Origin: Mobula birostris
Taxonomy: Eukaryota
Assembly (NCBI RefSeq): GCF_030028105.1
Contig: NC_092384.1
Coordinates: 3,577,665 to 3,641,664, forward strand
DNA: 64,000 nucleotides
Reading direction: 5' to 3'
The translations under genes and the position numbers were made by a program. Of this stretch, positions 24,091 through 45,286 are shown piece after piece. The notes beneath the pieces are model-generated. The model was not told where the DNA came from, did no database searches, and saw nothing but the letters and a program-made list of their open reading frames with translations. Within the stretch, counting starts at the first letter, position 1, and each line of letters starts with the position of its first letter.

Positions 24091-24145
24091 ATGCAAATAT
24101 TTACTTTGTTGCAGTATCTCTTAGTCCTGCAGATTACTTACACTG
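24091..24145 (+). CDS. Exon 1 (signal peptide) of V(J)-C1 inhibitory Ig receptor: MQIFTLLQYLLVLQITYT
   Basis: ATG in aaaATG context, hydrophobic 18-mer, phase-1 donor G|GTATGT compatible with the V exon acceptor. Confidence 0.8.
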
Positions 24146-24375
24146 GTATGTATACGCTTCTCTCGTTAATGCTGAATAACGGAACGGGTGCAGGGGATAT
24201 CTTCATGAGGTACTTTTTGCTCAATTAGTAAATCGCAGTTTAGTTAACTACAATTGATTTACTTTAATCACAAGGAAATTGACCTTTTTTTCGTTTACAG
24301 TGACAGTTTATGTTTTTTTCTGGTCAATAATGCCGATCATTATGCTCTGATAACGAATATTTTTCATTCTGACAG

Positions 24376-24696
24376 TTGCTGACAGGGCCTCGTTCACAAT
24401 ACACCAGTTTCCTGAGCAGGTGACGAAGGCAGAGGGTGAAAGTGTGTCAATTTACTGCACCTACCCAATCTTCGCTCAGAACTCACTGGTGGATGTTTAT
24501 TGGAGGAAAGGGGGACAAAAACAATTTATAGATGCCACTGCAGAGAGAAGGATGAGTATTATAACTTCAGAGCAAGGTTCTGCCGAACTCCATATCCTCG
24601 GGGTGAGTTTCGGTGACTCTGGAATCTATTATTGCAGTGTGAGAGACTGGACAAGAAAATTTTCCCAAGGCAATGGCACGAACGTTATTGTACACG
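24376..24696 (+). CDS. Exon 2: V-set Ig domain with germline-joined J-like strand
   Basis: Acceptor ttttcattctgacag, donor G|GTAAGT, 321 nt, phase 1-1. Motifs VSIYC, VYW, AELHI, DSGIYYC and SQGNGTNVIV. Confidence 0.95.
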
Positions 24697-25354
24697 GTAA
24701 GTCTCACTCGGCGTGTCTTAGACAAATGCAACGACTACATTTAACGGAGCGCGTTATATATTGATAAAGTAGAACAAGGGACTGCCACACTATCCACAAT
24801 AGTATTCTTCCTTTCGGGTTTGAATAACCACCGTTTACTGTTGGTGGAACAGTGTAATCTCCGAAAGAACATTGTTTTCTAATTTCAGAAAAAAAAAGTA
24901 TGCTCCTTTTTTATCTGGAAATTTAATTCCTGGGAAGTATATCTAATGAAGAATTTTAAGTCCGTAGCTAGGCAATTACTGAAATAGAATGTTACATGTG
25001 TTAACTGAAATTATTTCATCCGATTGTAGACCTGTGAGTTACAGATGATGTCGTGTCCTTCGTAAGTTAAGAATTCAGCGATTACCTGCAGAATATCAAA
25101 ACGATTCTGGAAAAGGTTCCAATGTTTTGTCAGCATATATAACAAATAACCGCTTCTCGGGTTTCCAGCCGGGTACAAATATCAATTGCAACCGATGTCT
25201 CGGTTGCATACTCTGGCATCATTAGGAAAGCCCGAGAATAGTTTATTTGTAAACTCGAGTCTGTCTGTCACTTTGCAAATGGAAAAAAAAATAAATAAAT
25301 GTTTGTTATGTCTATTTAGCGAATGGAGAACTTCTAAACAGAATTAACTTTTAA

Positions 25355-26345
25355 TCAGAATCAGAATCAGGACTAAAATCATCGGCGGGATACGTCGTGA
25401 TATTTATTAACGTACCGGCAGCAGTACAATATAAAGCAAATAAAACATAATAATATAGGAAAAAGAGAAAATCAGCAAAATCATTTAAAGTTGTTGTTCA
25501 GTGGTGAAGTACTTAAGTCGAGTCCGACTCTTCGTGACAGCGTGGACCATAGGGTATACAGGGTATTCATGGCAGTTATGGAAGTAGATGGCCGAGCATT
25601 TGTTCTCTGCAGACACTGCTTCTGTCCAGGCTAGGACCCGGCTGGGTTTGAACTCAGAACAATCCGGCCTTGGAGTCCAGTGCTGATGTCAGTAAGGTAG
25701 TGTTTATAGGGTCGTTATCCATGAGAGATCGGATAGCAGAGAGGAAGAAAGATCTCTTTAAATCGCTGAGTGTGTGTCTTCAGGCTTTCACACCTGCTTC
25801 CTTAAGGTTATAATGAGAAGAGGACATGACTTGGGTAATGGAAGTCCTTAATGATGAAGGCAGTCCTCCAGAGACACTGCTCCTTGAAGATGTCTTGGAT
25901 ACTATGGATGCTAGCACCCATGATAGAACTGACTCATTTATAACTTACTGTAGCTTCTTTCGATCTAGTACAGTAGTCGCTCCCCAGCATGCCAGACGGT
26001 GATGCAACCTGTCAAAATGCTCTTCTGGTACATCCCTAGACGTTTCCGAGGGTCTTAGGTGACAAACCAAATCTCCTCAAACTTCCAAAAAAATATAGCC
26101 ACTAACTTGCCCACATTATAGCAACGTCGATTTGTTAGGACCAGGTTAGTTCCCCAGAGATATTGACACCCAGGAACTTGAAATTGCCCTCTCTCTCCAA
26201 ATTTGAGGATTGATTTATGATCCCTCCTCCTACTGTTTCTGAAGACCTCGGTCAACTTTCTCGTCTTACTGCGTTGAGTGAAAGGTCGTTGCTGCAACTC
26301 CACTCAGCTGGCTAATATCGCTCTCTGCTGTACGCCCTCCCCTTT
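25355..26345 (-). mobile_element. Decayed L2-like LINE 3' portion, interrupted by a SINE
   Basis: Antisense (ATTCTG)n tail (aatcagaatcagaatcag) followed by typical antisense L2 body. Confidence 0.6.
25490..25690 (-). mobile_element. tRNA-derived SINE with an RTE-LINE-type 3' end and (CAA)n tail
   Basis: Minus strand has B-box gagttcaaaccc (25644-25655) and ends gtcacgaagagtcggactcgactt...gaacaacaac, resembling RTE/BovB 3' termini. Confidence 0.65.
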
Positions 26346-26829
26346 CCATCTGAGATTCTGCAACAATTGTTGTATCATTGCCAAATTTATTGCTGACATT
26401 TTAGCTATGCCTAGCTACATAGCCATGGATATAGAGAGAGTAGATAAGTGGTCTAAGGGCACATTCCAGAGATGCGCCAGTGTTGGTCCTCAGTGAGGTA
26501 CAGAGACCCATGGCTTATCAATCAGACTGAAAGAATGATGGTGATAAAGGCTGGAGTCAACGAACTGCAGTCAGCATCGTGAGCGCGTATTGGTATTGTC
26601 CTGGTGATCTAAGGCCGTCTGAAAAGCCGCTGATTTTGGTTCTAGTCCTGTGAGCTACCATATCTTCTGCCGTACATTCTGATTCTGAAAAAAATACACA
26701 GCAGCGTGCACTGTATGAATTCCTCCGTCAATAACTATTAGGAACCACAAGACGGTTTTAGTGGTATTGACCGTGTTCTAGTTTGTTCTCTGTTTTATTT
26801 AAAAACACAGTTTATTACTTAGTTTAGAA

Positions 26830-27062
26830 TGCTAAATCTGTTCAATTCTCTGCCCAGTGAAGCAGTGGAGGCTACCTCAGTTAATATATTTAAGAGAAGG
26901 TTGGATAAAAGTTTTGTATAGTAGGGAAATTAACGATTACGGAGAAAAGGCAGATAGGTATGGAGATGAGTCCATTACCAGATCAGCCGTGATCTTATTG
27001 AATGACGGAGCAGGATCTAGGGGCCAGATGGCCTTCTTCTGCTCCTATTTCTTATGTTCTTA
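26830..27062 (+). mobile_element. CR1 3' end fragment
   Basis: aattctctgcccagtgaagcagtggaggc...ctgctcctatttcttatgttctta tail. Confidence 0.8.
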
Positions 27063-28809
27063 AGTAATCAGTTAAACAGTAGAACATGTAAAAATAAAAC
27101 AGTGATTTTAATAATTATAAATATATGAAAGATTTCATGACATTTTGCGAGTTTCAGTTGTGAAAGCGGTACAGCATATAATATAAGTTTGTCTTGGAGG
27201 CAGGGATCGGTAAAATAAATGGCAGTAAGTTTGCTCACGATGGAAGACAGAACACTTTAAATCACACAATTGAGCATTGTACACATAATCAATGCAACGT
27301 CTAACAAAAGATTGTTCCAAAGTATGTAAAAAACAGAAATACCTGTTAAATTCAGAATTCCTAAACATTTAACGGTTGTAACCCTCCTTGGGATGATATG
27401 TCCTTGTTATACATTTCGAAGCTGTCACTGGGAAATTTATAATTTATTTTGCTCAGCAGTGAAACCCGCAATTTCTGGTCATCATTGTCATTACAGTACT
27501 GGAAGCAACCTTTATTTAATTATGTGCCCTCTTTTCACCTTATGTCTGCATTACTACATCAAGCTAGTTGGAAAATCGCTACAGCAATATGTTCCCCCAG
27601 AAAAGACGGCATTTTCCTTTTTTGTTCCAATATTATTTTCCAGTCTTTCCCGCAGGTTAACGATGTTACTCTGAAAAAAAAAAATCCTTCTTTATATTCC
27701 GTTCTGAACGTCAGGGAGTTTTCATCATTTTGTCATAACTTGCTGCAGCCTCAGAGACAAATCAAAAACACGTAGCGTCCAAAACATTACACAAATAATG
27801 ATCTGTAACATTTCAAAATAAATATTTCACCAGATTCATTTGAAATAAGGGCAAAGGGTATAATATCTTTGGCAGATTTGCTTTATAAATTCTGTCCTGA
27901 TCACAAGAGAATTAAAGATTTTAGCTTTATTGTTTCACTCTTACTGCAATTCCTGCTTATTATATTCCTCCTGTTACTTATTATTTTTCATTCCCCTGCT
28001 TGCCCCTCATTCCAGCATGGTCCAACATGCTGACTTCCACAATCACGCGTTCTCGATCCTCTGCGCCCATCAAACATTTTTTTTGTTTATTCCTTTACCT
28101 GCTGCAATGCTATTTATTCCGGAAATATACGTTTACTGCAACTTCTGGAGCTATGCAAAGCCTCTGATGAATATCTTCCACAGAACATCTAGGTATGCAG
28201 ATTCAGGATGTTTACCAGACATCCGGGTAGGATCGCTGAATTATTTCCCCGGAACGATGGTCTTGTGGTTTACAGTGGGTGGACACCATTTTTTTTTCTT
28301 GAATTGGAAGCCTTTGCTCTACATAGGCTTGGGTTGTATTTATGACGAAATATCACTGAATATTTTGAGATTTCGTCAAAAAACAATCTTTCAGGCCTCT
28401 AGCAAAGTTTCCCGCAACCCTTTGTTTCAAACAAAGCAAGCACATGGGTGACGGTGTGTTATGCTCAGGCTACACAGAACTTTCAGCGGGTTTAGAGAAT
28501 TAGAACATAGGGGTAAATAAGTGTTAAATAAGTAGTCGTAATATTGTGTTAAATGAGTAGTAATTTACTCTGACACAACCAAATAGAGGGGTCGAGTGTT
28601 TCGTCACTAGTGAGGGGTTACAAGGTTTTGGTAGTCACTGAGTTCTGTTCTTGTCTGTGAATGTTACACCTGAACCCCGTCCGGTGAGGAAAACCGCATA
28701 CTGTCAGACAGCAGCAAAATGAATGACGGAAGAAACAGTTTATTAAGGAAATAATGAAATCCAAACATTATAAATTACAATACCTGATATTCCAACACCT
28801 TAAATTTAC

Positions 28810-31800
28810 AGATGTAAGTTAAAGTGTATAAATCTGAGGTTATCTACTTTGGTGGCAAAAACAGAAAAACAGATTATTATCTGAATGGTGGCCGATTAGG
28901 AAAGGGGGAGGTGCAACGAGACGTGGGTGTCATTATACACCAGTCATTGAAAGTGAGCATGCAGGTACAGCAGGCGTTGAAAAAGGCGAATGGTATGCTG
29001 ACATTCATTGCAACAGGATTCAAGTACAGCAGCAGGGAGGTACCACTGCAGTTGTCAAGGCCTCGGTAAGACAACACCTGAAGCATCAGGAACAAAGGTG
29101 ATGAACTGAGAGCTTCGATACATACATGGAATTATGATGTAGTGGCCATTACGGAGACTTGGCTGGCACCAGGGCAGGAATGGATTCTCAATATTCCTGG
29201 ATTTCAGTGCTTTAAAAGGGATAGAGAGGGCGGAAAAAGGGGAGAAGGGGTCGCATTACTTGTCAGGGATACTATTACAGCTACAGAAAGGGTGGGTAAT
29301 GTAGCAGGATCCTCTTTTGAGTCAATATGGGTGGAAGTCAGGAACAGGAAGGGCGCAGTTACTCTACTAGGGGTATTCTATAGGCTCCCTGGTAGCAGCA
29401 GAGATACAGATGAGCAGATTGGGAGGCAGATTTTGGAAAGGTGCAAAAATAACACGATTTTTACCATGGGTGACTTTAACTTCCCTAATATTGATTGGCA
29501 CCTGATTAGTTCCAAGTGTTTAGATGGGGCAGAGTTTGTTAAGTGTGTCCAGGACGGATTCCTGTCACAGTATGTGGACAGGCCGACCAGGGGAAATGCC
29601 ATAATAGATCTAGTACTAGTTCATGAACCGGGTCAGGTCACAGATCTCTCAGTGGGTGACCATCTGGGGGACAGTGACCACCGATCCCTGGCCTTTATAA
29701 TTATCATGGAAAAGGATAGAATCAAAGAGGACAGGAATATTTTTAATTGGGGAAAGGCAAATTATGAGGCTATAAAGCTACAACTTGCGGGTGTGAATTG
29801 GGATGATATTTTTGCAGGGAAATGTACTATGGGCACGTGGTCGATGTTTAGCGCTCTTTTGCGGGATGTAAGGGATAAATTTGTCCCGGTGAGGAAGATA
29901 AAGAATGGTAGGGTGAAGGAACCATGGGTGACAAGTGAGGTGGAAAATCTAATCAGGAGGAAGAAGGCAGCATACATGAGGAATAGGAAGCAAGGATCAG
30001 CTGGGTCTATTGATGAATATAGGGAAGCAAGAAAGAAGCTTAAGAAGGGGCTGAGAAGAGCAAGAAGTGGGCATGAGAAGGCCCTGGCGAGTAGGGTAAA
30101 GGAAAACCCCAAGGCATTCTTCAATTACGTGAAGAAAAAAAGGATGACAGGAGTTAAGGTAGGACCGATTAGAGATAAAGGTGGGAAGATGTGCCTGGAG
30201 GCTGTGGAAGTGAGCGAGGTCCTCAACGAATACTTCTCTTCGCTATTTACCAATGAGAGGGAACGTGATGATGGTGAGGACAATATGAGTGAGGTTGATG
30301 TTCTGGAGCATGCTGATATTAAGGGAGAGGAGGTGTTGGAGTTGTTAAAATACATTAGGACAGATAAGTCCCCGGGGCCTGACGTAATATTCCTCAGGCT
30401 GCTCCACGAGGCGAGAGAAGAGATTGCTGAGCCTCTGGGTAGGATCTTTATGTCCTCGTTGTCCACGGGAATGGTACCGGAGGATTGGAAGGAGGCGAAT
30501 GTTGTTCCCTTGTTCAAAAAAGGTAGTAGGGATCGTCCGGGTAATTATAGACCAGTGAGCCTTACGTCTGTGGTGGGATAGCTGTTGGAAAAGATTCTTA
30601 GAGATAGGATCTATAGGCATTTAGTGAATCATATTCTGATCAGGGACAGTCAGCATGGCTTTGTGAAGGGCAGATCGTGTCTAACAAGCCTGGTAGAGTT
30701 CTTTGAGGAGGTGACAAGGCCTATAACTGAGGGTAGTGCAGTGGAGGTGATCTATATGGATTTTAGTAAGGCATTTGACTAGGTTCCACACGGTAGGCTT
30801 ATTCAGAAAGTTAGAAGGCATGGGATCCAGGGAATTTCGTTCAGGTGGATTCAGAATTGGCTTGCCTGCAGAAGGCAGAGGATGGTGGGGGAGGGAGTAC
30901 ATTCAGATTGGAGGATTGTGACTAGTGGTGTTCCACAAGGATCTGTTCTGGGACCTCTAATTTTCGTAATTTTTATTAGCGACCTGGATGTGGGGGTAGA
31001 AGGATGGGTTGACAAGATTGCAGACGACACAAAGGTTGGTGGTGTTGTAGATAGTGTAGAGGATTGTCAAATATTGCAGAGAGACATTGATAGGATGCAG
31101 AAGTGGGCTGAGAAGTGGCAGATGGAGTTCAACCCGGAGAAGTGTGAGGTGGTACACTTTGGAAGGACAAACTCCAAGGCAGAATACAAAGTAAATGGCA
31201 GGATACTTGGTAGTGTGGAGGAGCAGAGGGATCTCGGGGTACATTTCCACAGATCCCTGAAAGTTGCCTCACAGGTGGATAGGGTAGTTAAGAAAGCTTA
31301 TTGTGTGTTAGCTTTCATAAGTCGAGGGATAGAGCTTAAGAGTCGCGATGTAATGATGCAGCTCTATAAAACTCTGGTTAGGCCATACTTGGAGCATTGT
31401 GTCCAGTTCTGGTCACCTCACTATAGGAAAGATATGGAAGAATTGGAAAGGGTACAGAGGAGATTTACCAGGATGCTGCCTGGTTTAGAAAGTATGCATT
31501 ATGATCAGAGATTAAGGGAGCAAGGGCTTTACTCTTTGGAGAGAAGGAGGATGAGAGGAGACATGATAGAGGGGTACACAATAATAAGAGGAATAGATAG
31601 AGTGGACAGCCAGCGCCTCTTCCCCAGGGCACCGCTGCTCTATACAAGAGGACATGGCTTTAAAGTAAGGGGTGGGAAGTCCAAGGGGGATATTAGAGGA
31701 AGTTGTTTTACTCAGAGAGTGGTTGGTTCGTGGAATGCACTGCCTGAATCTGTGGTGGAGGCAGATACACTGGTGAAGTTTGGGAGACTGCTAGACAGGT

Positions 31801-32475
31801 ATATGGAGGAATGTAAGTTTGGGGCTTATATGGGAGGCAGGGTTTGAGGGTCGGCACAACATTGTGGGCCGAAGGGCCTGTATATGTGCTGTACTATTCT
31901 ATGTTCTATGTTCTATGTACTGTGTGCAGTTTTGGTCCCCTAATCTGAGGAAAGTCATTCTTGCCATAGAAGCAGTACAAATAACGTTCACCAGATTGAT
32001 TCCTTGTATGGCAGGACTTTCATATGATGAAAGACTGGATCGACTAGGCTTATACTCGCTGGAATTTAGAAGATTGAGGGGGGTTCCTATTGAAACGTAC
32101 AAAATCATAAAGTGATTGGACACGCTAGATTCAGGAAGATTGTTTCCGATGTTGGGGAAGTCCAGAACGACGGGTCACAGTTTAAGGATAAAGGGAAAGC
32201 CTTTTAGGACAGAGATGAGGAAAAACATCTTCACACAGAGAGTGGTGAATCTATGGAATTCTCTGCGACAGGAAACATTTGAGGCCAGTTCATTGGCTAT
32301 ATTTAGTAGGGAGTTAGATATGGCCCTTGTGAGGAAAGGGATCGGGGTATGGAGAGAAGGCAGGTACAGGGTTCTGAGTTGGATGATCAGTCATGACCAT
32401 ACTGAATGGCGGTGCAGGCTGTAAGGCCCGAATGGCCTACTCCTGCAACTATTTTCTATGTTTCTATGTTTCTAT
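28810..32475 (+). mobile_element. CR1 family A 3' fragment (28810-29081 and 31918-32475), split by a nested CR1
   Basis: The sequence encoding RPHLEYCVQFWSP is broken at cacctgaagca|...|gtactgtgtgcag and resumes after the insert's tail. Confidence 0.88.
29082..31917 (+). mobile_element. Near full-length CR1 family B ORF2 (AP endonuclease plus RT) with two nonsense mutations
   Basis: ORFs 29142-30581, 30585-30782 and 30882-31847 are in one frame, separated by TAG at 30579-30581 and 30780-30782. APE motifs AITETWL, GDFNFP and SDH; RT motifs [20 protein letters not shown] and ADDTK; (TTCTATG)n tail. Confidence 0.95.
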
Positions 32476-33099
32476 TCCATGGCATTATTAAAAGAATGAC
32501 ATTAAATGTCGCTAAATACCCTACACCGGAACAATCTCACTACGCTGTGCTTTGATCATTAACTTTATTGACGTAGTAATTTATTCTTGTTATAAGCAAC
32601 TGACAACTGTATGTTTACTTTGAAACGATTCGCGTCGTAACGAGCTTAGGACAATGTCCAATTACAATCACTTCTTTCCTGTTGTTGCTGAATCCGACCT
32701 AGCTAAATGAACGCCTGTGCTTCTTCTTAAATCGGGTATTTTTCGTCTTCATAACCAGATCTAGAGAAACCCTGTCATGGAAAGCAGGAGGGTTGGGCAT
32801 GAAATAATACTTACGTTTTTTTGGCTCATTTTCATACATCTCTGTTTTGTTTCATTTCCCATTGCCAAGCATGATCACTTTCCTCTCCAAGCCGATTTAA
32901 CAAAATGATATCTCCCCGGCGACAAAGTCATGGTACATTTCACCTTCCAACTTGAAACTGAAGATGCAGATCGGCCATAATCTTTCAGTGTGTTAGAAAA
33001 AAAATGTTGTTTTTCTTGCATGTTGACAGACAGGAGGGAACTACAGGAAACCAATTAACCGCTGAAATTGTAGGGTTATTAAAATGCACAAAATTAGTT

Positions 33100-33830
33100 T
33101 GAATTTTTTTTGACACGAGTCATAGATTTATACAACCTAGACGGACACTTCTCAACCCAAATCTGACATGCCGAACAAACCCCAATATCCCTGAACACAT
33201 TTTTTTTCTATTCATGCGCATGTCTGAATGTTTCTTTTTCTTTGGCATTATCATTTTATCCCGCTTCCTCAACTTCCTCGTGCATGTCATTTCATGTACC
33301 TACTGCCAAGTGTGCAGAAAAAAATACCTTTTAGGTTCAATTTAAACCTATGCCCATTCATTTTAAATCCATCCCTCCAGTTGCAAACACCGAGAATCTG
33401 GGAAGAAGACTTTGACTATCCACATTATCTTGGTCCTTATAACTTTATAAGCATCTATCAGAGCACTCTTCGACCTCCTTCTCTGCTGACAAAGAGTCGT
33501 AGATTCTCCAAGTAAATGAAATCCTGCAGAGCCAGTGCTGCACGCACTCATTCCAGATTAATGACATTTATGCTGTGGCTAGGTGAAGGGAACCATGGAC
33601 AATACCCCAAGTATGTTCTCGCCAACGACTTGTGCAATTTCAGCCTGACGTCTCAATTCCTGACCAACGCAGGCAGGAATATCAAACTGCCTTCTTCGCC
33701 ACATTTCCCAACTGTGAAACTACTTTAAGGGATTATGCACGTACGGTACTAGGGTTCAGTTTATGTCAACCCTCTCTATGGAACTCCCAATTATTGTTTA
33801 AGCGTTGTTCTAGTTTAATGTAGAAAATAG
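33100..33830 (-). mobile_element. Old CR1 3' remnant
   Basis: Antisense of CR1 C-terminal region, heavily decayed. Confidence 0.6.
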
Positions 33831-35516: not shown

Positions 35517-35794
35517 TTCCGTCGGCTCCGTTGAAAATCACCGAAGTAAACGCTCCTTCCGTGACTCTGACGTGCACAACTGCTGCTTTTTTCCCAAGGA
35601 CTATGAGCTCATATGGTATAAAAATGAAATCAAAATCACTTCAGGAATGCATACCACACGAATGCAGAACGAGGAGGGATTATATCTCGTTTCAAGCTCC
35701 CTCAATGTAACAGAAAGCGGGTATGTTTATACTTGCCAGGTGTTCCATGAATCTATGAAGGAGCCAGCTTCCGAGTCATATAGAATCATATTGG
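35517..35794 (+). pseudogene. Exon 3: C1-set Ig domain with a 1-nt deletion and a non-canonical donor
   Basis: Strong acceptor ctcttctttttttaaatcatttgcag. VPSAPLKITEVNAPSVTLTCTTAAF then shifts frame at T6C3 (35587-35595) into PKDYELIWYKN...YTCQVFHES. Length is 278 nt instead of 279; the expected donor reads TTG G|GGAGGC. Confidence 0.85.
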
Positions 35795-36996
35795 GGAGGC
35801 TTATATTCTTAACCACATGTTTTATGTCTGGTATTTATCAATTCCTCACAAACAGTGATGAAGCGAGCATATTCAAAGGGGGAAAGCGAAATGTAAGGCA
35901 TTGGCTATACAAAGAAGAGTTAGATATCATATTATACTGCTGCTGTTTCCTGCTTCAAGGAATAATATGCAAAAATAAATGGCGTAACTCCTTGTCTTTT
36001 GCAGATCCTGTTTTTTCTAAATCCCTGTTATCAGCAATGCAGACTTGCCCTTTTATGTAATTTTATCTGATCTCAACTTTGCACGATCAGATTCACTGAA
36101 TTTTCTCATCACTTAATTACATGACCTGAAATTTGTTGTTGTTTGACAGCAGTACAATGCAGTCATCGACCTACTAGAAGTTACATAGATAAATCAGTAG
36201 TACAAAAATGTTCCCGTAAGGAAACAGAATGTTTCATAATCGGTGTGTGGGGGTCTTCAGTTATCTTCTCCACGACTGAGCAAAGTGAAGAATGCATGCA
36301 GTTTCGACTGCATCTCTAACAGAAATAGACTTTCCTGGATTCTCTCTAACGCGTCACAATCTTACTCTAATTGAACACAATATCACAATATCCCAGACCA
36401 TAGTTCAATAAAAATGCGGCATGACTTCACTTCTTTCAGATTCCACATTTGTGCCGACGAATGGCATAAGCCTTACTAGCATCTTCGCAACCTGCCCTGA
36501 CATGATACTATAAATAAATGTAAGCTGCTTTTCCCTTCATCTGGTTTAAAACAACATATTGATATCCCTAATTCTGCACACCAAGCTGCTACACCTTATA
36601 TTAGCCTACCTGCCTATTATATCAGAGTTTTTATCTGCTAAATTTTGCCGGCACAATTCACAACTCGACCAAGAAATTCCGTTTTGCATCATCATATTCT
36701 TTGACCTGAGTTCGCTTGTGTATGTTTGCCAGCCCTCGCTTCAATCCATGCCTTATCAGCTTACTCAAGAGTACAGAATTACTGATGAAAATAAGCTGAA
36801 TTAAATATTGATATAGTTACTTATTAATGTCCTACGCATAATCCACGTTTTATTTCAATTTGCGATTTACTACGAAGGCAATGTGGTCAAGATGCGAGAG
36901 GAAGTACGGATCGGATTCTTTACGTCCGCAGTACACGTGATTCAATTGTTTAATCTCCGTAAAACGCTAATATTTGACTTCTATTGCACACCTCAG

Positions 36997-37098
36997 AAAG
37001 CAGATACCAGTTCATCTTAATCCTGACGGGTGCACTTGCAGCATGCGGAGTCATTATCCTAGCGCTGTTGTTACTTATCAGGCGTTGCAGAGTAGACG
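36997..37098 (+). CDS. Exon 4: transmembrane segment ESRYQFILILTGALAACGVIILALLLLIRRCRVD
   Basis: Acceptor cttctattgcacacctcag, donor G|GTAAAT, phase 1-1; 22-residue uncharged hydrophobic stretch followed by RRCR. Confidence 0.9.
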
Positions 37099-37580
37099 GT
37101 AAATCGTTACATTGCCTTGGTCCATATTTAGTTTCACTAGCATACTGGAGTTGAAATGGCAGTGAGAAGGATAAAACATTCATGTTAAAATATAGGTTTA
37201 AGTAGATATGCTTGAGAGTCTATCTGACAGCTGAATGCTGTGTGCAGAACAAGATTTAAAACGCATTTTACTCGATGTTACTAAATTATGTAACAACTAA
37301 AAAAAATATTGTTAACTCTGCAACTAGTGTTACAAATTTAGAATGTTTGTTGCGCAGGAGAACACATGCAAGCCACAGAGTTTGAACATTTCTACGCATA
37401 CACTAGGTCAATTTTTATCATCAGTAATATAATCTTTGGGTGGTTTGATAAAATGACAAGAATTGCATCAGATCACTGGCCTATTTCGAACCGATCTGGT
37501 TGCTTTTGGAATATTCAATAACATTCGGTGCAGCAGTTCACAAGCTGAGGATGAAATTGGTCACTTTTTATTTCCTCCAG

Positions 37581-37627
37581 TTGTAGCCGAAAATGATGAG
37601 AACTTAAGTCGCTACCTGGAAAATCAG
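37581..37627 (+). CDS. Exon 5: short cytoplasmic exon VVAENDENLSRYLENQ
   Basis: Acceptor tttttatttcctccag, donor CAG|GTAAGA, phase 1-0. Confidence 0.8.
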
Positions 37628-37666
37628 GTAAGATTAATATTATTATGACATATATAGGGGTTTATA

Positions 37667-38190
37667 TATAGTCATAGTCATACTTTATTGATCCCGGGGG
37701 AAATTGGTTTTCGTTACAGTTGCACCATAAATAATAAATAGTAATGGACCCATAAATAGTTAAACAGTAATATGTAATTTATGCCAGTAAATTAAGAAAT
37801 AAGTCCAGGACCAGCCTATTGGCTCAGGGTGTCTGACCCTCCAAGGGAGGAGTTGTAAATTTTGCTGGCCACAGGCAGGAATGACTTCCTATGACGCTCA
37901 GTGCTGCATCTCGGTGGAATGAGTCACTGGCTGAATGTACTCCTGTGCCCATCCAGTACATTATGTAGTGGATAGGAGACATTGACCACGATGGTATGGA
38001 ACTTAGACAGCATCCTGCTTTCAGACACCACCGTGAGAGAGTCCAGTTCCATCCCCACAACATCACTGGCCTTACGAATGAGTTTCTTGATTCTGTTGGT
38101 GTCTGCTACCCGCAGCCAGCTGCCCCAGCGCACAACAGCAACAAATGATAGCACTGGACACCACAGACTCGTAGAATATTCGCAGCATAT
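37667..38190 (-). mobile_element. L2-like LINE 3' fragment with (ATGACT)n tail, in intron 5
   Basis: catagtcatagtcatactttattgatcccggg antisense tail; minus-strand ORF piece RVADTNRIKKLIRKASDVVG. Confidence 0.7.
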
Positions 38191-38329
38191 GTTGCACATA
38201 CACCCATTATCAGGAGCACATAATTAGAGCAACAGAATGACTGTCACTTTGTATGTAACACCTTATGTTCCAGAATAGCAGTGCTCATTTTTGTTCTGTA
38301 TCTCTGACTTACGTTGTGCAGCATCTTCA

Positions 38330-38840
38330 GCGATTTATTTATTCAGAGGAGTTTCACAAGGACGATTCCAGGAATGAACGCTGTATCACACAAGGAAAGT
38401 TTAATGGCTCCGGATCTGCACTTGCTGGAATTCAAAAGGCTGAGGGGGATCTCATTGAAACCTTTCGAATGTTGAAAGGTCTAGACAGGGTAGATTTGGA
38501 AAGGATGTTGTCCATGGTCGGAGAATCTCGGACAAGATAGCAGAGCCTCAGGAAAGAGGGGCGCCCTTTCAAAGCAGAGATGCAGAGATTTTTTTTTAGC
38601 AAAAAGTTGTGAATTTGTGGAATTTGATGCCACATATCGCTGTGTAGGCCAATTCATTGGGTGTAATTAAGGCAGAGATAGATAGTCTCTGATTGAACAT
38701 AGCATTAAAGGTGACGAGAAGATGTCGGGAACTGGAGTTGAGGAGAAGAAAATAAAGTATTAGGCATGGTTGAATGGCAGAGCAAACTCGATGAGCCAGA
38801 TGGCTTAATTCTGCTCCTATGTATTATCGTCTTCTGGTCT
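38330..38840 (+). mobile_element. CR1 3' fragment
   Basis: GDLIETFRMLKGLDRVD-like translation and gtattatcgtcttctggtctta tail. Confidence 0.75.
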
Positions 38841-38989
38841 TATTAAGGAATTCCTTAACCTCCCCAAGATACTGCATTTGATATTTTAACTAATCAGACT
38901 GGTCCTGTGTGAATCATTTTACTTGAGGCCCGTCATTTTCTAATTGGGCATTCGTCCTAACAAAATAAAGTTTAGGACAGTAGCTAGTG

Positions 38990-39335
38990 CAGTGGTATGC
39001 GAAGGTTTCAGCACCCCGGCCAAAATTTCTGTTACTGCGTATAGTTAAGTGAGTAGAAGATGAACTGATCTGCAAAAGTAATAAAGTTAAATATGAAACA
39101 TTCTTTTCAATATGTTAAGCAAGTTAAGAGTATTATTTTTGTGTTGTACAATTTTAGGTTGAAAAAAGGAAAGGAGAACCATGCAAAATTTGGGCACCCC
39201 AAGAGATTTGAGCTTTCAGATTATTTTTACCAAGTTCTCACACCTTAATTAGCTTGTTAGGGCTATGGCCTGTTCACAATCATCATTGGGAAAGGCCAGG
39301 TGATGCAAATATTAAAACTTTATAAATACCTTGAC
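38990..39335 (+). mobile_element. One end of a Tc1/mariner IR/DR-type DNA transposon
   Basis: Starts CAGTGGTATGCGAAGGTTTCAGCACCCC (38990-39017) with an inner direct repeat CATGCAAAATTTGGGCACCCC (39180-39200); no transposase and no opposite end seen. Confidence 0.7.
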
Positions 39336-39354
39336 TACTCAAAACTTGCCCCAG

Positions 39355-42300
39355 CAATATCGGGATTGCTAACTGTGCCATGTGCTAGCGAGACCAAGAA
39401 TAGTAGGATCAGGCAGATGAATGCGTGGCTGAGAGACTGGTGCAGGGGGCAGGACTTCAGATTCTTGGATAATTGGGACCTCTTATGGGGGAAGTATGAC
39501 CTGTTCAAAGGACAGGTTACACCTGAACCCGAAGGGGACCAATATCCTGCCGGGTAAGTTTAACAGAGTTGTTAAGGAGGGTTTAAACTAATTTCGCAGG
39601 GGGATGGGAAACGGAATGACAGAGCGGAGGAAGGGGAAAACAGAAATAAATCTAAGATAACGAGCAGTAAATATGTCAGGAAAGACAGGCATGTGATGGG
39701 GCAAATTTGTAACCATTGGGATGAATTACAATGCAATAAAGTAGCAGTGAAATCAAAGCAAAAAATACCAAATACTGGTCTTAAGCTGTTATACTTAAAC
39801 AGACGCAGCATAAGGAATAAGGTGGATGATCTTGTTGTACAGCTACAGATTGGCAAGTAAGATACTGCGGCCATCAATGAGACGTGGCTAAAGGATGCAT
39901 GTCTCTGGCAACTGAACGTCCAAGGATACACGGTGTATTGGAAGGATAGGAAGGTAGGCAGAGGGGGAGGCGTGGCTTTTTTGGTAAAAATGATATTAAA
40001 TCATTAGAAACAGGTGATATAGGATCGGAAGGTGAAGAATCTTTATGTGTTGAGCTTAGAAGTCGCAGGGGTAAAAGGAACCTGATGGCAGTTATTTATA
40101 GGCCTCCAAACAGATGCAGTCATGTGGACTACAAATTACAACAGGAAATAGACAAGGCTTGTCAGAAGGGCGGTGTTATGATAATTGTGGAGAATTTTAA
40201 AATGTGAATGGATTCAGAAAATCAGGTCGCAATTGGATCTCAAGAGAGAATCTGGAGAATATCTGCGAGATGGCTTTTTAGAAGAGCTTGTTGTTGGCCC
40301 ACAAGGGGATCGGTTGTACTGGATTGGGTATTGTGTAATGAACCGGAGGTGATTAGACAGATGGAGGTGAAGGAACCCATAGGAGGCAGTGATCATAACA
40401 TGATTGAATTCACTGTGAAATTTGAAAAAGAGAAGCCGAAATCTGATGTGTCGGTATTTCAATGGAGTAAAGGAAATTACAGTGGCATGAGAGAGGTTCT
40501 GGCCAAAGTTGACTGGAAAGGGACACTAGCGGGAAAGACGGCATAGCAGCAGTGGCTGAAGTTTATGTGAGATGTAAGGAAGGTGCAAGACAGGTATATT
40601 CCAAAAAAGAATAAATTTTCGAATGGAAAAAGGATGCAGCCGTGGTTGACAAGAGAAGTCAAAGCCAAAGTTAAAACAAAGGAGAGGGCATACAAGGAAG
40701 CAAAAATTCGTGGGAAGACAGAGGATTGGGAAGTTTCTAAAACCTTACAAAAGGAAAGAAGAAGCATACAAATTAGCCAGAAAAAGTGGCTCGCCTGAGG
40801 ACTGGAAGAAATTCAGAGTTCAGCAGAGGAGGAAGGGGAAAACAGATTATGAGAGAGAACTGGCAGGGAACATAAAAACTGACTGTAAAAGCTTTCATAA
40901 ATATGTAAAAAGTAAAAGACTGGTAAAGACAAATGTAGGTCCCCTACAGACAGAAACAGGTGAATTGATTATGGGGAGCAAGGACATGGCAGATTAATTG
41001 AATAATTACTTTGGTTCTGTCTTCACTAAGGAGGACATAAATAATCTTCCAGAAATAGTAGGGGACAGATGGTCCAGTGAGATGGAGGAACTGAGCGAAA
41101 TACATGTTAGTAGGGAAGTGGTGTTAGGTAAATTGAAGGGATTAAAGGCAGATAAATCCCCAGGGCCAGATAGTCTGCATCCCAGAGTGCTTAAGGAAGT
41201 AGCCCAAAAAATAGTGGATGCATTAGTGATAATTTTTCAAAAGTCGTTAGATTCTGGACCAGTTCCTGAGGATTGGAGGGTGGCTAATGTAATCCGACTT
41301 TTTAAAAAAGGAGGGAGAGAGAAACCGGGGAATTATAGACCGGTTAGCCTAACGTCGGTGGTGGGGAAACTGCTGGAGTCAGTTATCAAAGATGCGATAA
41401 CAGCACATTTGGAAAGCGGTGAAATCATCGGACAAAGTCAGCATGGATTTGTGAAAGGAAAATTATGTCTGACGAATCTCATAGAATTTTTTGAGGATGT
41501 AACTAGTAGAGTGGATAGGGGAGAACCAGTGGATGTGGTATATTTGGATTTTCAAAAGGCATTTGACAAGGTCCCACACAGGAGATTAGTGTGCAAACTT
41601 AAAGCACACGATATTGGGGGTAAGGTATTGATGTGGATAGAGAATTGGTTAGCAGACAGGAATCAAAGAGTGGGAAAAAACGGGACCTTTTCAGAATGGC
41701 AGGCGGTGACTAGTGGGGTACCGCAAGGCTCAGTGCTGGGACCACAGTTGTTTACAATATATATTAATGACTTGGATGAGGGCATTAAATGCAGCATCTC
41801 CAAGTTTGCGGATGACACGAAGCTGGGTGGCAGTGTTAGCTGTGAGGAGGATACTAAGAGGATGCAGAGTGACTTCGATAGGTTGGGTGAGTGGACAAAT
41901 TTATGGCAGATGCAATTTAATGTGGATAAGTGTGAAGTTATCCTCTTTGGTGGCAAAAATAGGAAAACAGACTATTATCTGAATGGTGGCCGATTAGGAA
42001 AAGGGGAGGTGCAACGAGACCTGGGTGTCATTATACACCAGTCATTGAAAGTGGGCATGCAGGTACAGCAGGCGGTGAAAAAGGCGAATGGTATGCTGGC
42101 ATTTATAGCGAGAGGATTCGAGTACAGGAGCAGGGAGGTACTACTGCAGATGTACAAGGCCTTGGTGAGACCACACCTGGAGTATTGTATGTAGTCTTGG
42201 TCCCCTAATCTGAGGAAAGACATCCTTGCCATAGAGGGAGTACAAAGAAGGCTCACCAGATTGATTCCTGGGATGGCAGAACTTTCATATGAAGAAAGAC

Positions 42301-44638
42301 TGGATGAACTGGGCTTGCACTCGTTGGAATTTAGAAGATTGAGGGGGGATCTGATTGAAACGTATAAAATCCTAAAGGGATTGGACAGGCTAGATGCAGG
42401 AAGATTGTTCCCGATGTTGGGGAAGTCTAGTACGAGGGGTCACAGTTTGAGGATAAAGGGGAAGCCTTTTAGTACAGAGATTAGGAAAAACTTCTTCACA
42501 CAGAGAGTGGTGAATCTGTGGAATTCTCTGCCACAGGAAACAGTTGAGGTCAGTTCATTGGCTATATTTAAGAGCGAGTTAGATATGGCCCTTGTGGCTA
42601 CGGGGATCAGGGGGTATGGAGGGAAGGCTGGGGCAGGGTTCTGAGTTGGATGATCAGCCATGATCATAATAAATGGCGGTGCAGGCTCGAAGGGCCGAAT
42701 GGCCTACTTCTGCACCTATTTTCTATGTTTCTATGAAACTAAGGTCATTAAGAGTGAAAAGATTTAATAAGAAAGGAAGTTAGCAAATAATATCAAAAGA
42801 TACTAAAGGCTTTTTCAAGTATATAAAGAGCAAAAGATAGGTGAGAGTAGATGTAGGACCGATGGAAAATGATGCTGGAGAAATTGTAATCGGAGTTAAG
42901 GAGATGGCGGAGGAACTGAACGAGTATTTTGCATCAGTCTTCACTGAGGAAGACATCAGCACCATACTGGACACACAAGGGTCGCCGGGAAGAGAAGTGT
43001 GCGCAGTCACAATTACGACAGAGAAAGTACTCATGAAGCTGAATAGTCTAAAGCTAGATAAATTTTCCAGACAAGATGGAATGCACCCTCGTTTTCTTAA
43101 GGTAGTAGCTGTGGAGATTGCGGAGGCATTAGCGATGATCTTTCAATAGTCAATCGATTCTGGCATGGTTCCGGAGGACTGAAAGACTGCAAATATCACT
43201 CCGCTATTCAAGAAGCGGGTAAAGAAGCAAAATGGAAATTATAGACCTGTTCGCTTGACATCTGTGATTGGGAAGTTGTTGGAGTTGATTGTCAAGGATG
43301 AGGTTACAGAGGTACCTGGAGGCATATAACAAGAGAGGCAGAACTCAGCATGGATTCCTTAAAGGAAAAACTTGCCTGACAAACCTATTACAATTTTTTT
43401 GAGGAAATTTCCAGTAGGCTAGACAAGGGAGATGCAGTAGATGTTGTATATTTGGCTTTTCAGAAGGCCTTTGGCAAGGTGCCACACATGAGGCTACTTA
43501 ACAAGAAAAACGCGCATGGAATTACGGGAAATTTGCATACGTTGGATAGAGCGCTGGTTGATTAGCAGGAAACAGAGAGTGGGAATAAAGGGATCCTAAT
43601 CTGGTTGGCTGCCGGTTACCAGTGGTTTTCCACAGGGTTCCGAGTTGGGGCCGTTTCTTTTTACATTGTATATCAACGATTTGGATTATGGATTAAATGG
43701 TTTTCTGGCTAAGTTTGCTGACGATACAAAGATAGGTGGAGGGACCAGAACTGCCGAGGAAACGGAGAGTCTGCAGTGAGACTTGGATAGATTGGAAGAA
43801 TGGGCAAAGACGTGCTAAATGAAATACAGTGTTGGAAAGTGTATGGTTATGCACTTTGGCAGAAAAAAAAACGGGCAGACTATTAATTAAGTGGGGAAAG
43901 AATTTAACATTCTGAGATGCAACGGGACTTGGGAATCCTCGTACAGGATACCCTTAAGGGTAACCTCCAGGTTGAGTCAGTGGTGAAGAAGGCGAATGCA
44001 ATGTTGGCATTCATTTCCAGAGGAATAGAGTATAGGAGCAGGGATGTGATGCGAGGCTCTATAAGGCAGTGATGAGACCTCACTTTGAGCACTGTTGGCA
44101 GTTCTGGTCTCCTTATTTAAGATAGGATGTGCTGACGTTGGAGAGGGTACAGAGAAGATTCAGTAGAATAATTCCAGGCATGAGAGGGTTAACATATGAG
44201 GAATGTTTGTCTGCTCTTGGACTGTATTCCTTGGAGTTTAGAAGGATGAGGGGAGACCTCATTGAAGCATTTCGAATGTTGAAAGGCATGGCCAGAGTGG
44301 ATGTGGCAAAGATGTTTCCCATGATGAGGGAGTCTAGTACGAGAGGGCATGACTTAAGGATTGAAGGGCGCCCATTCAGAACAGAGATGCGAAGATTTTA
44401 TTTTAGTCAGAGAGTGGTGAATCTATGGAATTTGTTGCCATGTGCAACAGTGGAGGCCAAGGCATTGGGTGTATTTAAGGCAGAGATTGATAGGTATCTG
44501 AGTAGCCAGGGCATCAATGGTGAGAATGCAGGGGAATGGGACTCAATTGGAGAATGGGTCAGCTCATGATAAAATGGCGGAGCAGACTCGATGGGCCGTA
44601 TGGCCGACTTCTGCTCCTTTGTCTTTTGGTCTTTTGGA
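39355..44638 (+). mobile_element. Decayed CR1 family C (ORF1 esterase C-terminus plus ORF2), split by a nested CR1-A
   Basis: SRIRQMNAWLRDWCRGQDFRFLDNW (SGNH esterase end), APE remnants and RT remnants; tail gtcttttggtcttttgg; host broken at caaaaggaaa|...|aaactaaggtcattaag. Confidence 0.85.
40757..42735 (+). mobile_element. Young 5'-truncated CR1 family A nested in CR1-C
   Basis: 398-aa ORF 40998-42194 and ORF 42261-42644, nearly identical to 1261-3114; tail tttctatgtttctatg; short gaaa duplication or microhomology at the junctions. Confidence 0.93.
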
Positions 44639-44700
44639 CTTAATTAGTTTTCAAAAATAGTGGATCAGAAGCTCCTTATCTCTAATGATTGTTTCCATAG

Positions 44701-44868
44701 ATTATGCAAGGAACTGAAGATACACTTATGTATGCATGTGTGGATCTCGCCGCTTCTCAGAAAAACGCAAGAAGAGTGCAGAAGACTCATGAGACCGAGT
44801 ATGCCGGAATAAAGATAAAGGAAGAGGCGAGAAATATGGAAACGAAAACAGCAACATACAGCTATTGA
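44701..44868 (+). CDS. Exon 6: cytoplasmic tail with ITIM (LMYACV) and ITSM (TEYAGI), ending in TGA
   Basis: Acceptor gattgtttccatag, phase 0. Translates IMQGTEDTLMYACVDLAASQKNARRVQKTHETEYAGIKIKEEARNMETKTATYSY*; TGA is followed by TAA. Confidence 0.88.
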   Translation: MMQGTEDTLMYACVDLAASQKNARRVQKTHETEYAGIKIKEEARNMETKTATYSY

Positions 44869-45286
44869 TAATTGTATTACACGTTACTGGTTATCGTGGT
44901 GTCGAGGGGTTGTTACTGTTTCGTAACAACTGTGGAGTAAGCAAAGGATTTTAATGAGGAATCACCAATTCCAACAAAACAAAAAAGCTACGATTAATGG
45001 ACCACTGAATAGGAAATCGTGTTCAGCACAGCAAGTGTATAGAAACGAAATCCCTATCAGCAGCATTGTGCCCGCATCACATGACACTTTACAATATAAT
45101 CACCAGTTCAAATACATTTTAACCGTTGGTTGTAGCTGCCTCCATTACCTTCCGGGCAGCTCATTCCAAATAAACTACACCCTATGACTTACATACGCGC
45201 TCTTGTTTTAAATTCCGCCCTCTAATTTTGAACAGTTGTTCTCAAGTTCTAGAGTCCCCTGCCGTGGTAAAATTACACTGTGTATC

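What the first reader, a model, noticed from the sequence alone, without database searches (positions are those of the whole stretch)
24091..44868. Non-rearranging VJ-C1-TM receptor with an ITIM plus ITSM tail, hidden among transposons
Seen in sequence: six exons with compatible splice phases (1,1,1,1,0) join into a ~323-aa type I membrane protein once a single base is restored in exon 3. The order is leader, V domain with a J-like G strand, one C1-set domain, uncharged TM, and two tyrosine motifs. The ORF track shows only fragments of it. Established: C1-set domains are largely confined to antigen receptors, MHC, tapasin/B7-type and SIRP proteins, and germline-joined V(J)-C1 genes (PRARP/VJC1-type) are discussed as relics of the pre-RAG antigen receptor. 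Inference: this is a member of a poorly characterised chondrichthyan SIRP/NKp30-like inhibitory receptor family with an antigen-receptor-like ectodomain.
Basis: partly seen in the sequence, partly recalled or inferred. Interest (0 to 1): 0.8.

Follow-up and report, generated by a model that had tools for sequence, protein, structure and literature searches.

The report
Manta SIRP-like receptor, broken C1 exon
This is a real manta-ray gene for an inhibitory immune receptor with an antibody-like tip. Its antibody-type constant-domain exon is damaged in this copy, and it belongs to a large shark-and-ray gene family that databases already predict but nobody seems to have studied.

Summary
The six exons are real. 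They match a predicted 326-aa Mobula hypostoma protein of the same build (tblastn E 6e-66 to 2e-29 for the V, C1 and last exons; the two short exons match more weakly).

- **Splicing:** every splice site is canonical except one. The C1 exon ends in GG, not GT, and the assembly also lacks one base inside it. Restoring one base would therefore not rescue a VJ-C1 protein.
- **Intact product:** the only intact product is a 230-aa V-only form made by skipping the symmetric C1 exon. That isoform is annotated, and seen in RNA-like contigs, for paralogues.
- **Family:** the gene is the giant-manta orthologue of that M. hypostoma gene. Its family was found almost only in sharks, rays and chimaeras and carries only automatic names.
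- **Domains:** V is VJ-type, C1 is true C1-set, and the tail keeps an ITIM, 23 residues, then an ITSM. A whole-length fold search puts SIRP-alpha first, but there is one C1 domain, not two.
- **Reads:** read contigs confirm the GG but not the deletion. No exact RNA contig shows this copy expressed.

The scan has already reported this kind of gene elsewhere in this genome.

Verdict: a real, damaged member of a predicted but unstudied SIRP-like family, of modest interest.

The parts
24091..24145 (+). Exon 1: start codon and most of the signal peptide (split leader), ends in phase 1, donor CTG|gtatgt
   Evidence: Sequence. The splice joint 24144/5 to 24375/6 is seen in RNA-like contigs of runs X1, X3 and X4; these contigs come from paralogues or the orthologue. 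94% identical to the leaders of P0154 and P0156.
24376..24696 (+). Exon 2: end of the leader plus a germline-joined VJ-type V domain. It has the Cys and Trp hallmarks, YYC and a G strand GNGTNVIVH. Phase 1 to 1, donor ACG|gtaagt. No RSS.
   Evidence: Pfam V-set E 1.2e-12. 92% identical to P0156. No heptamer or nonamer in 24300-24900. The V-only model matches CD79b, Ig kappa V, CD8 beta, TCR alpha V and NKp30.
35517..35794 (+). Exon 3: C1-set domain (contains YTCQVFH). Symmetric phase 1 to 1, 278 nt instead of the expected 279. Damaged in this copy.
   Evidence: Pfam C1-set E 3.3e-8. 88-97% identical to P0156. Paralogue and orthologue RNA contigs splice at 35794|36997. If the exon is included as it stands, a stop follows at 35708-35710.
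35593..35596 (+). Site of the one-base loss in the C1 exon (window CCCA; relatives CCCGA)
   Evidence: Paralogue contigs carry one extra base and a G here (tables 3 and 4). The frame change is visible in tblastn. Exact read contigs do not bridge the site, and the window's base has 2.0 of 24.1 depth.
35795..35796 (+). Lost splice donor of the C1 exon: GG where GT is needed
   Evidence: Splice table. An exact DNA contig of the same species, X6 record 26 (35689-35951, no differences, depth 6.1), confirms GG.
36997..37098 (+). Exon 4: short stalk, uncharged transmembrane helix (about 37011-37079) and stop-transfer RRCRVD. Phase 1 to 1, donor ACG|gtaaat.
   Evidence: 84-91% identical to relatives. 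Predicted as a helix in the orthologue model.
37581..37627 (+). Exon 5: cytoplasmic (VVAENDENLSRYLENQ), phase 1 to 0. The acceptor lies 9 nt further 3' than the orthologue protein implies.
   Evidence: Paralogue RNA contigs join the TM exon to this exon (joint 37097 to 37585).
44701..44868 (+). Exon 6: ITIM LMYACV (44725-44742), ITSM TEYAGI (44794-44811), stop codon at 44866-44868
   Evidence: 96% identical to P0156. Across 12 relatives the ITIM tyrosine is invariant and the ITSM E-Y-A is nearly invariant; the tyrosines lie 23 residues apart.
45169..45174 (+). First AATAAA after the stop codon; possible poly(A) signal
   Evidence: Pattern search. Not otherwise tested.
29142..31847 (+). LINE fragment (endonuclease plus reverse transcriptase) inside intron 2
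   Evidence: Pfam Exo_endo_phos 2.9e-11 and RVT_1 1.3e-10.
40998..42194 (+). LINE reverse-transcriptase fragment inside intron 5. The middle cytoplasmic exon of the paralogues is missing from this intron.
   Evidence: Pfam RVT_1 1e-32. No tblastn trace of the SPSYADL exon anywhere in the window.

Best explanation
The locus is the giant-manta orthologue of a predicted 326-aa Mobula hypostoma gene. The species call comes from run matches and is probably Mobula birostris. The gene is one tandem member of a cartilaginous-fish family of germline-joined VJ-C1-TM receptors with a SIRP-alpha-like inhibitory tail.

In this copy the C1 exon has decayed. Its splice donor is GG (shown by reads), and the assembly lacks one base in the exon (not shown by reads). 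All other exons and splice sites are intact.

The likely output is therefore the exon-3-skipped mRNA, a 230-aa V-only type I receptor. Skipping this symmetric exon is already a regular isoform in the family.

Inferred mechanism: the V domain binds an unknown ligand. Src-family kinases then phosphorylate the ITIM and ITSM tyrosines, which lie 23 residues apart. The pair docks the tandem SH2 domains of SHP-1 or SHP-2, and this damps activation of the cell that carries the receptor.

Shown here: anatomy, orthology, family, motif conservation and the lost donor. Inferred: expression of this copy, exon skipping in this copy, phosphatase recruitment and the ligand.
For: - **Exons, phases and splice sites:**. 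The exon-3-skipped CDS is 693 nt with an open 230-aa frame.
- **Orthology:** identity to P0156 is 92% in V, 88-97% in C1 and 96% in the tail. The C1 tree puts WINDOW and P0156 as sisters with support 97/98. Three M. birostris / M. hypostoma pairs show that the paralogues predate the species split.
- **Shared loss:** the window and P0156 both lack the middle cytoplasmic exon.
- **Donor:** GG is confirmed by an exact DNA contig. A 97%-alike RNA contig of the sister species splices at 35794|36997 (record 21).
- **Isoform pairs with and without C1:** P0153/P0001 and P0006/P0007. A V-to-TM loose end appears in X2.
- **Where the lesions fall:** both sit in exon 3. The chance of that under random placement is about 0.08.
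- **Tail:** the ITIM tyrosine is invariant and the ITSM E-Y-A is nearly invariant in rays, sharks and chimaera.
- **Closest fold:** SIRP-alpha is the top Swiss-Prot match over residues 18-326. The PDB profile search hits SIRP-alpha V plus C1 in one stretch.
- **SIRP parallels:** SIRP ITIMs recruit SHP-1/2, and D1-only SIRP splice variants exist (PMC12975943).
Against: - No RNA-like contig matches this copy exactly. The best V-exon contig is 98% alike over 170 nt. All contigs over the C1, TM and exon 5 parts are 90-96% alike, so they come from paralogues.
- No protein of this locus appeared among the M. birostris predictions found.
- The window's V branch is five times longer than its orthologue's (0.06 against 0.012). 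That could mean relaxed constraint.
- The tail has one ITIM/ITSM pair instead of the two pairs seen in full-length relatives.
- Only contigs, not raw reads, were available, so expression and allele state are open.
Confidence: 0.5

Rival explanations
1. The whole gene is a young unprocessed pseudogene. After the C1 exon broke, or before, the locus stopped being used, and no functional protein is made.
For: - There are two disabling lesions.
- No exact RNA contig was found in three RNA-like runs of the species.
- No predicted protein for this locus was retrieved.
- The V branch is long.
- The middle cytoplasmic exon is lost.
- Earlier notes report a pseudogene paralogue 7 kb downstream (unchecked).
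Against: - Both lesions sit in the one exon that the family can skip.
- The five other exons keep open frames, canonical splice sites and the conserved tyrosines.
- The orthologue also lacks the middle exon, yet a 97%-alike contig, probably its mRNA, shows it spliced (record 21).
Confidence: 0.32
2. The gene is an intact VJ-C1 receptor in the animal. On this view the missing base is an assembly error or one allele, and the GG donor is a null allele or is bypassed.
For: - At 35595 only 2.0 of 24.1 summed depth in the species' DNA contigs shows the window's base.
- The exact contig stops at 35594.
- One contig aligned without a gap shows that intact-type sequence can be hidden at this site.
- The C1 exon is no more diverged than its orthologue's (end branch 0.025 against 0.041).
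Against: - The GG at 35795-35796 lies in an exact contig at normal depth (6.1).
- GG donors are essentially unused.
- RNA-like runs of the species hold next to none of this exon's words.
- Every C1 contig in them is 90-96% alike, so all come from paralogues.
Confidence: 0.1
3. On classification: the family is part of the published shark NCR3 (NKp30) family rather than a SIRP-like lineage.
For: - The G strand GNGT-x-V-I-V resembles the NKp30 J-like motif (from memory).
- NKp30 of rat, macaque and human are among the top V-only fold matches, with TM 0.77-0.81.
- A V-only ITIM form would resemble the inhibitory shark NCR3 genes reported by Kinlein et al. 2021. That paper could not be read here.
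Against: - CD79b, Ig kappa, CD8 beta and TCR alpha score as well or better.
- No hit carries an NCR3 name.
- The family has a C1 domain and no charged TM residue.
- Earlier notes place the manta NKp30-like clusters and UrIg on other chromosomes (unchecked).
Confidence: 0.15
4. The protein is a B7/butyrophilin-type ligand (IgV-IgC) rather than a receptor.
For: - Fold matches include PD-L1, CD276, butyrophilins and NCR3LG1.
- The C1 piece's best PDB sequence hit is the CD276 IgC domain.
- Several relatives are auto-named NCR3LG1-like or CD276 homolog.
Against: - The V domain is VJ-type, with the G-x-G-T G strand.
- The tail keeps a conserved ITIM/ITSM pair across the family.
- SIRP-alpha ranks first over the whole length.
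Confidence: 0.05

Closest known systems
SIRP family (SIRP-alpha / PTPNS1)
   Same: - A VJ-type V domain followed by C1-set domain(s), an uncharged TM and ITIM-type tyrosines that recruit SHP-1/2.
- Splice variants that keep only the V domain (PMC12975943).
- Top whole-length fold match, and V plus C1 matched in one stretch of 2wng.
- NCBI names many relatives SIRP-alpha-like.
   Different: - One C1 domain instead of two. A relative with two (P0052) has near-identical copies, which looks like a recent duplication.
- This copy has one tyrosine pair, not two.
- Only 17-18% identity.
- CD47 binding and synteny are untested.
- SIRP D1 is not among the top 30 V-only fold matches.
NKp30 / NCR3, including the expanded shark NCR3 family (Kinlein et al. 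2021, not readable here)
   Same: - A non-rearranging VJ-type V exon with a similar G strand.
- The V-only isoform has the NKp30 build.
- Fold TM 0.77-0.81.
   Different: - The family has a C1 exon.
- The TM has no charged residue.
- The tail is inhibitory.
- The V domain is not specifically closer to NKp30 than to other VJ domains.
UrIg and UrIg2 (non-rearranging elasmobranch antigen-receptor-like genes; PMC12227049)
   Same: - A split leader, a single VJ exon and C1-type domains.
- Found only in cartilaginous fish.
- UrIg2 (9dmx) is the second-best PDB profile hit.
   Different: - UrIg and UrIg2 have three to eleven C domains and no ITIM/ITSM tail.
- This family has one C1 domain and a signalling tail.
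PD-1 (V-only receptor with ITIM plus ITSM)
   Same: The exon-3-skipped product would be a single V domain, a stalk, a TM, an ITIM and then an ITSM (PD-1 build as described in PMC11599192).
   Different: No sequence or fold evidence of kinship. The likeness is one of design only.
B7 family / B7-H6 (IgV-IgC ligands)
   Same: A two-domain V-C ectodomain. The fold and sequence hits include PD-L1, CD276 and NCR3LG1.
   Different: A VJ-type G strand and a conserved ITIM/ITSM pair point to a receptor.

Membership tests
SIRP family | N-terminal V-set domain of the germline-joined VJ type | tested here: met
   Pfam V-set E 1.2e-12. One exon carries V plus a J-like G strand and there is no RSS. Fold matches are other VJ-type domains.
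SIRP family | [quoted passage not shown] | tested here: not met
   The window has one C1 exon, as do all 18 aligned relatives. Only P0052 has two, and they are near-identical.
SIRP family | Cytoplasmic ITIM-type tyrosine motifs (SIRP-alpha type) | tested here: met
   LMYACV and TEYAGI lie 23 residues apart and are conserved across the family. Phosphatase binding itself was not testable.
SIRP family | D1 binds CD47 | not testable with these tools
   No binding assay was possible, and no complex prediction was run because nothing pointed to a partner.
SIRP family | Orthology or synteny with the tetrapod SIRP cluster | not tested
   Flanking genes lie outside the window. No tetrapod SIRP sequence could be fetched for a tree.
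NKp30 / NCR3 | Ectodomain of a single VJ-type V domain, no C domain | tested here: inconclusive
   The gene carries a C1 exon, but it is disabled here. The skipped form would fit this feature.
NKp30 / NCR3 | Charged TM residue that couples to CD3-zeta or FcR-gamma (mammalian NKp30, established knowledge) | tested here: not met
   The TM FILILTGALAACGVIILALLLLI has no charged residue.
NKp30 / NCR3 | V domain groups with NKp30 rather than with other VJ domains | tested here: inconclusive
   NKp30 ranks 11th to 18th (E about 2e-8 to 4e-8, TM 0.77-0.81). It sits behind or level with CD79b, Ig kappa, CD8 beta and TCR alpha. No tree with NCR3 sequences was possible.
NKp30 / NCR3 | MHC linkage | not testable with these tools
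   There is no flanking sequence. Unchecked earlier notes place MHC genes, UrIg and NKp30-like clusters on other pieces of this genome.
UrIg / UrIg2 | A VJ exon followed by three or more C1-type domains (PMC12227049) | tested here: not met
   There is one C1 exon only. The split leader and VJ exon are shared.
Ig C1-set domain (PF07654) | Profile match above the gathering score, and the Y-x-C-x-V-x-H signature | tested here: met
   34.2 bits against a cut-off of 21 on the second piece alone. YTCQVFH is present. The family profile hits Ig CH domains, UrIg2 and SIRP.
ITIM / ITSM signalling pair | ITIM (S/I/V/L)-x-Y-x-x-(I/V/L) and ITSM T-x-Y-x-x-(V/I), with spacing suited to tandem SH2 domains | tested here: met
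   Regex scan of the tail. The spacing of 23 residues is conserved in alignment A4. Suitability of that spacing for SHP-1/2 rests on general knowledge.

The most novel reading that the evidence does not exclude
The family is an ancient line of non-rearranging VJ-C1 receptors specific to cartilaginous fish. It would be either the counterpart of tetrapod SIRPs or a separate relic of the pre-RAG antigen-receptor stock. On this reading, the locus catches a VJ-C1 gene turning into a V-only inhibitory receptor through decay of a symmetric exon that the family already skips. That is the route by which V-only receptors of the NKp30 or PD-1 design could have arisen.
Probability: 0.2. Interest if true: 0.55.

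Novelty: new member of a known kind. Interest (0 to 1): 0.3.

Why it matters
C1-set domains joined to a germline VJ domain are rare outside antigen receptors, and they figure in arguments about what the RAG transposon invaded.

This family shows that sharks, rays and chimaeras hold dozens of such genes with SIRP-like inhibitory tails. All of them are hidden under misleading automatic names. They should be included in V and C1 phylogenies alongside UrIg, UrIg2, NCR3 and SIRP.

This particular copy adds one small point. The C1 exon is dispensable enough to be skipped as a regular isoform and to decay on its own. That is a concrete path from two-domain to V-only receptors.

For genome annotation, the locus should be labelled either as a gene with a pseudo-exon or as a pseudogene, pending read-level checks.

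Tried and rejected
- **A hinge-to-TM deletion form.** I first read the X2 loose end after 24696 as a fusion of hinge and TM. This is an artefact of a consensus built from two short C1-type reads and one longer V-to-TM read. The last 14 letters fit the direct V-to-TM joint of P0157.
- **The GT at 35831 as the C1 donor.** I rejected this because relatives end the exon at 35794, and the read-on codes unconserved hydrophobic residues.
- **Other family genes in the window.** tblastn with 182 fetched proteins found none. The remaining hits are reverse-transcriptase pieces fused into some gene models.
- **The middle cytoplasmic exon.** No trace in the window.
- **Domain-level ranking in the PDB.** V, C1 and tail profiles gave no useful ranking. 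Multi-domain antibody chains swamp the top 60, and the tail profile hit nothing.
- **A nurse-shark NCR3 name among relatives.** Searches found none.
- **Papers not held.** Kinlein 2021, Flajnik 2012, Ohta and Flajnik 2015, and the 2023 UrIg paper could not be read.
- **Complex prediction.** Not run, because no partner is indicated.
Full report
**What is there.**
Six exons on the + strand build a type I Ig-superfamily gene:
- leader, 24091-24145
- VJ exon, 24376-24696
- C1 exon, 35517-35794
- TM exon, 36997-37098
- short cytoplasmic exon, 37581-37627
- last exon, 44701-44868, with the stop at 44866-44868

Pfam finds V-set (E 1.2e-12) in exon 2 and C1-set (E 3.3e-8, 34 bits against a cut-off of 21) in the second piece of exon 3. 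The leader is split as in antigen-receptor genes. The V exon carries its own J-like G strand (GNGTNVIVH), and no RSS heptamer or nonamer lies nearby. The TM is uncharged. The tail has an ITIM (LMYACV), then 23 residues on an ITSM (TEYAGI). The introns hold LINE endonuclease and reverse-transcriptase fragments. An AATAAA lies 300 nt after the stop.

**The lesions.**
Every splice site is canonical except the donor of the C1 exon. Relatives end that exon after the codon split at 35794. There the window reads TATTGG|ggaggc, so the intron starts GG, not GT. Inside the exon the assembly reads TTTTTTCCCAAGG, where contigs of paralogues read TTTTTTCCCGAAGG. That is a one-base loss that shifts the frame and leads to a stop at 35708-35710.
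- Skipping exon 3, which is symmetric (phase 1 to 1), gives a 693-nt CDS with an open 230-aa frame: leader, V, TM, ITIM, ITSM.
- Placed at random over the coding exons and splice dinucleotides, both lesions would fall in exon 3 about 8% of the time.

**What the reads say.**
Only Logan contigs were available. DNA-like runs of organism A hold 0.66-0.89 of the C1 exon's words, so organism A is the window's species. Organism B holds 0.25-0.27.
- An exact organism-A DNA contig (35689-35951, no differences, depth 6.1) confirms the GG.
- The deletion is not confirmed. The exact upstream contig stops at 35594. At 35595 only 2.0 of 24.1 summed depth shows the window's base. One contig (X15 record 8) shows that an intact-type sequence can be aligned without a gap and look like a plain mismatch.
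- The missing base may therefore be real, heterozygous or an assembly slip.
- RNA-like contigs show the exon 1 to exon 2 joint, V-to-C1 and V-to-TM continuations, and the C1-to-TM and TM-to-exon-5 joints. All of these are 88-98% alike, so they come from paralogues or from the sister species.
- One organism-B contig, 97% alike, splices at 35794|36997. It fits the orthologue's mRNA (record 21).
- No contig proves that this copy is expressed. The best is a 170-nt V-exon contig with 3 differences.

**Relatives.**
A full HMMER scan with the V exon found 248 proteins at E up to 0.001. All 30 single-V or V-C1 hits whose source I looked up are from cartilaginous fish. They cover rays, many sharks and the chimaera Callorhinchus, and all carry only automatic names:
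- SIRP-alpha-like
- tapasin-related-like
- NCR3LG1-like
- CD276 homolog
- Ig lambda-1-like
- H-2 class I-like
- uncharacterized

. The one non-chondrichthyan hit in those searches is a weak lungfish V-only protein (E 3.4e-4).

The closest relative is P0156 of Mobula hypostoma. It has 326 aa and the same six-exon build, and it also lacks the middle cytoplasmic exon. Identity is 92% in V, 88-97% in C1 and 96% in the tail.
- In the C1 tree the window and P0156 are sisters (97/98).
- Three M. birostris / M. hypostoma pairs show that the paralogues are older than the species split.
- Letters between exon joints in organism-A contigs code RTEAA as in M. birostris P0153. Those of organism B code RTEVAA as in M. 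hypostoma P0157. The window is therefore most likely from the giant manta, as earlier notes of the scan also say.
- No M. birostris protein for this locus was retrieved.
- Isoform pairs with and without the C1 domain are annotated in manta (P0153/P0001) and in horn shark (P0006/P0007).

**What kind of protein.**
- An AlphaFold model of the orthologue has a confident V domain, a seven-strand C domain and a TM helix, with a disordered tail.
- Over the whole length the best reviewed matches are bovine and human SIRP-alpha (E 3.4e-17, aligned from residue 18 or 6 to 326). PD-L1, TAPBPR, CD276, Ig lambda, butyrophilins, B7-H6 and TCR beta follow. In the PDB the top matches are antibody light chains.
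- A family profile hits IgA1 heavy chain, UrIg2, and then SIRP-alpha with V plus C1 in one stretch.
- The V domain alone matches the VJ-type set about equally: CD79b, Ig kappa V, CD8 beta, TCR alpha V and NKp30.
- In the tail, the ITIM tyrosine is invariant and the ITSM E-Y-A is nearly invariant across 12 relatives from rays, sharks and chimaera. The spacing of 23 residues is fixed.
- Full-length relatives carry two such tyrosine pairs. From memory, that is the SIRP-alpha layout.
- The family works like SIRP-alpha, but it fails one defining SIRP feature: it has one C1 domain, not two.

**How it most likely works.**
By inference, the V domain binds an unknown ligand. The phosphorylated ITIM and ITSM dock SHP-1 or SHP-2, as in SIRP-alpha (PMC12975943), and inhibit the carrying cell. 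In this copy the C1 spacer is lost, so the receptor, if made, would be a short V-only form. SIRPs also have D1-only splice variants. I put about 0.5 on this reading, 0.32 on a dead gene and 0.1 on an intact gene with assembly or allelic artefacts.

**Comparison with the literature.**
Known non-rearranging VJ genes of elasmobranchs are NCR3, UrIg and UrIg2 (PMC10751288, PMC12227049). UrIg and UrIg2 have many C domains and no inhibitory tail. I could not read the shark NCR3 paper (Kinlein et al. 2021), so an overlap with that family is not excluded. No hit carries that name, and unchecked earlier notes place the manta NKp30-like clusters and UrIg on other chromosomes. Five full-text searches found no paper on this family.

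**Verdict.**
The family call is right. The gene is a damaged copy of a predicted but apparently unstudied family. The scan has already met this kind of gene several times in this genome, both on this chromosome and on others. Novelty: a new member of a known kind. Interest: modest.

Noticed in passing
window 36102-36161 and 37662-37720: Two short stretches in introns 3 and 5 draw enormous summed contig depth in every run. In DNA run X6 the figures are about 4,400 and 640,000, and hundreds of loose ends flank them. They look like very high-copy short repeats (SINE-like or satellite).
   Followed up: no
window 37560-37585: The exon 5 acceptor (cctccag|TTGTAG) lies 9 nt further 3' than the orthologue protein implies (KTEVVAE against VVAE). 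The manta product would therefore be 3 residues shorter at this point.
   Followed up: partly
window 37196-37491: An RNA-like contig of run X1 (302 nt, 29 differences, 3 gaps) lies on intron 4, and matching variants appear in DNA contigs. It is probably a repeat or unspliced paralogue sequence.
   Followed up: no
protein P0052 (relative, source not looked up): One family member has V, then two near-identical C1 domains, then a TM and a tyrosine-motif tail. This is the three-domain SIRP layout, produced by what looks like a recent tandem exon duplication.
   Followed up: no
proteins P0015 (Heterodontus) and P0051 (source not looked up): The N-terminal parts of these predicted family proteins match reverse-transcriptase fragments in the window. 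The gene models probably fuse a LINE piece to the receptor.
   Followed up: partly
protein P0205 (Protopterus annectens, 234 aa): This is the only hit outside cartilaginous fish in the family searches (E 3.4e-4). It is a lungfish V-only receptor with an NGTGT-type G strand and two tyrosine motifs in its tail.
   Followed up: no
window 1347-2276 (+), 20272-20847 (-): Further LINE reverse-transcriptase fragments lie upstream of the gene. No other cellular gene was found anywhere in the 64 kb.
   Followed up: partly
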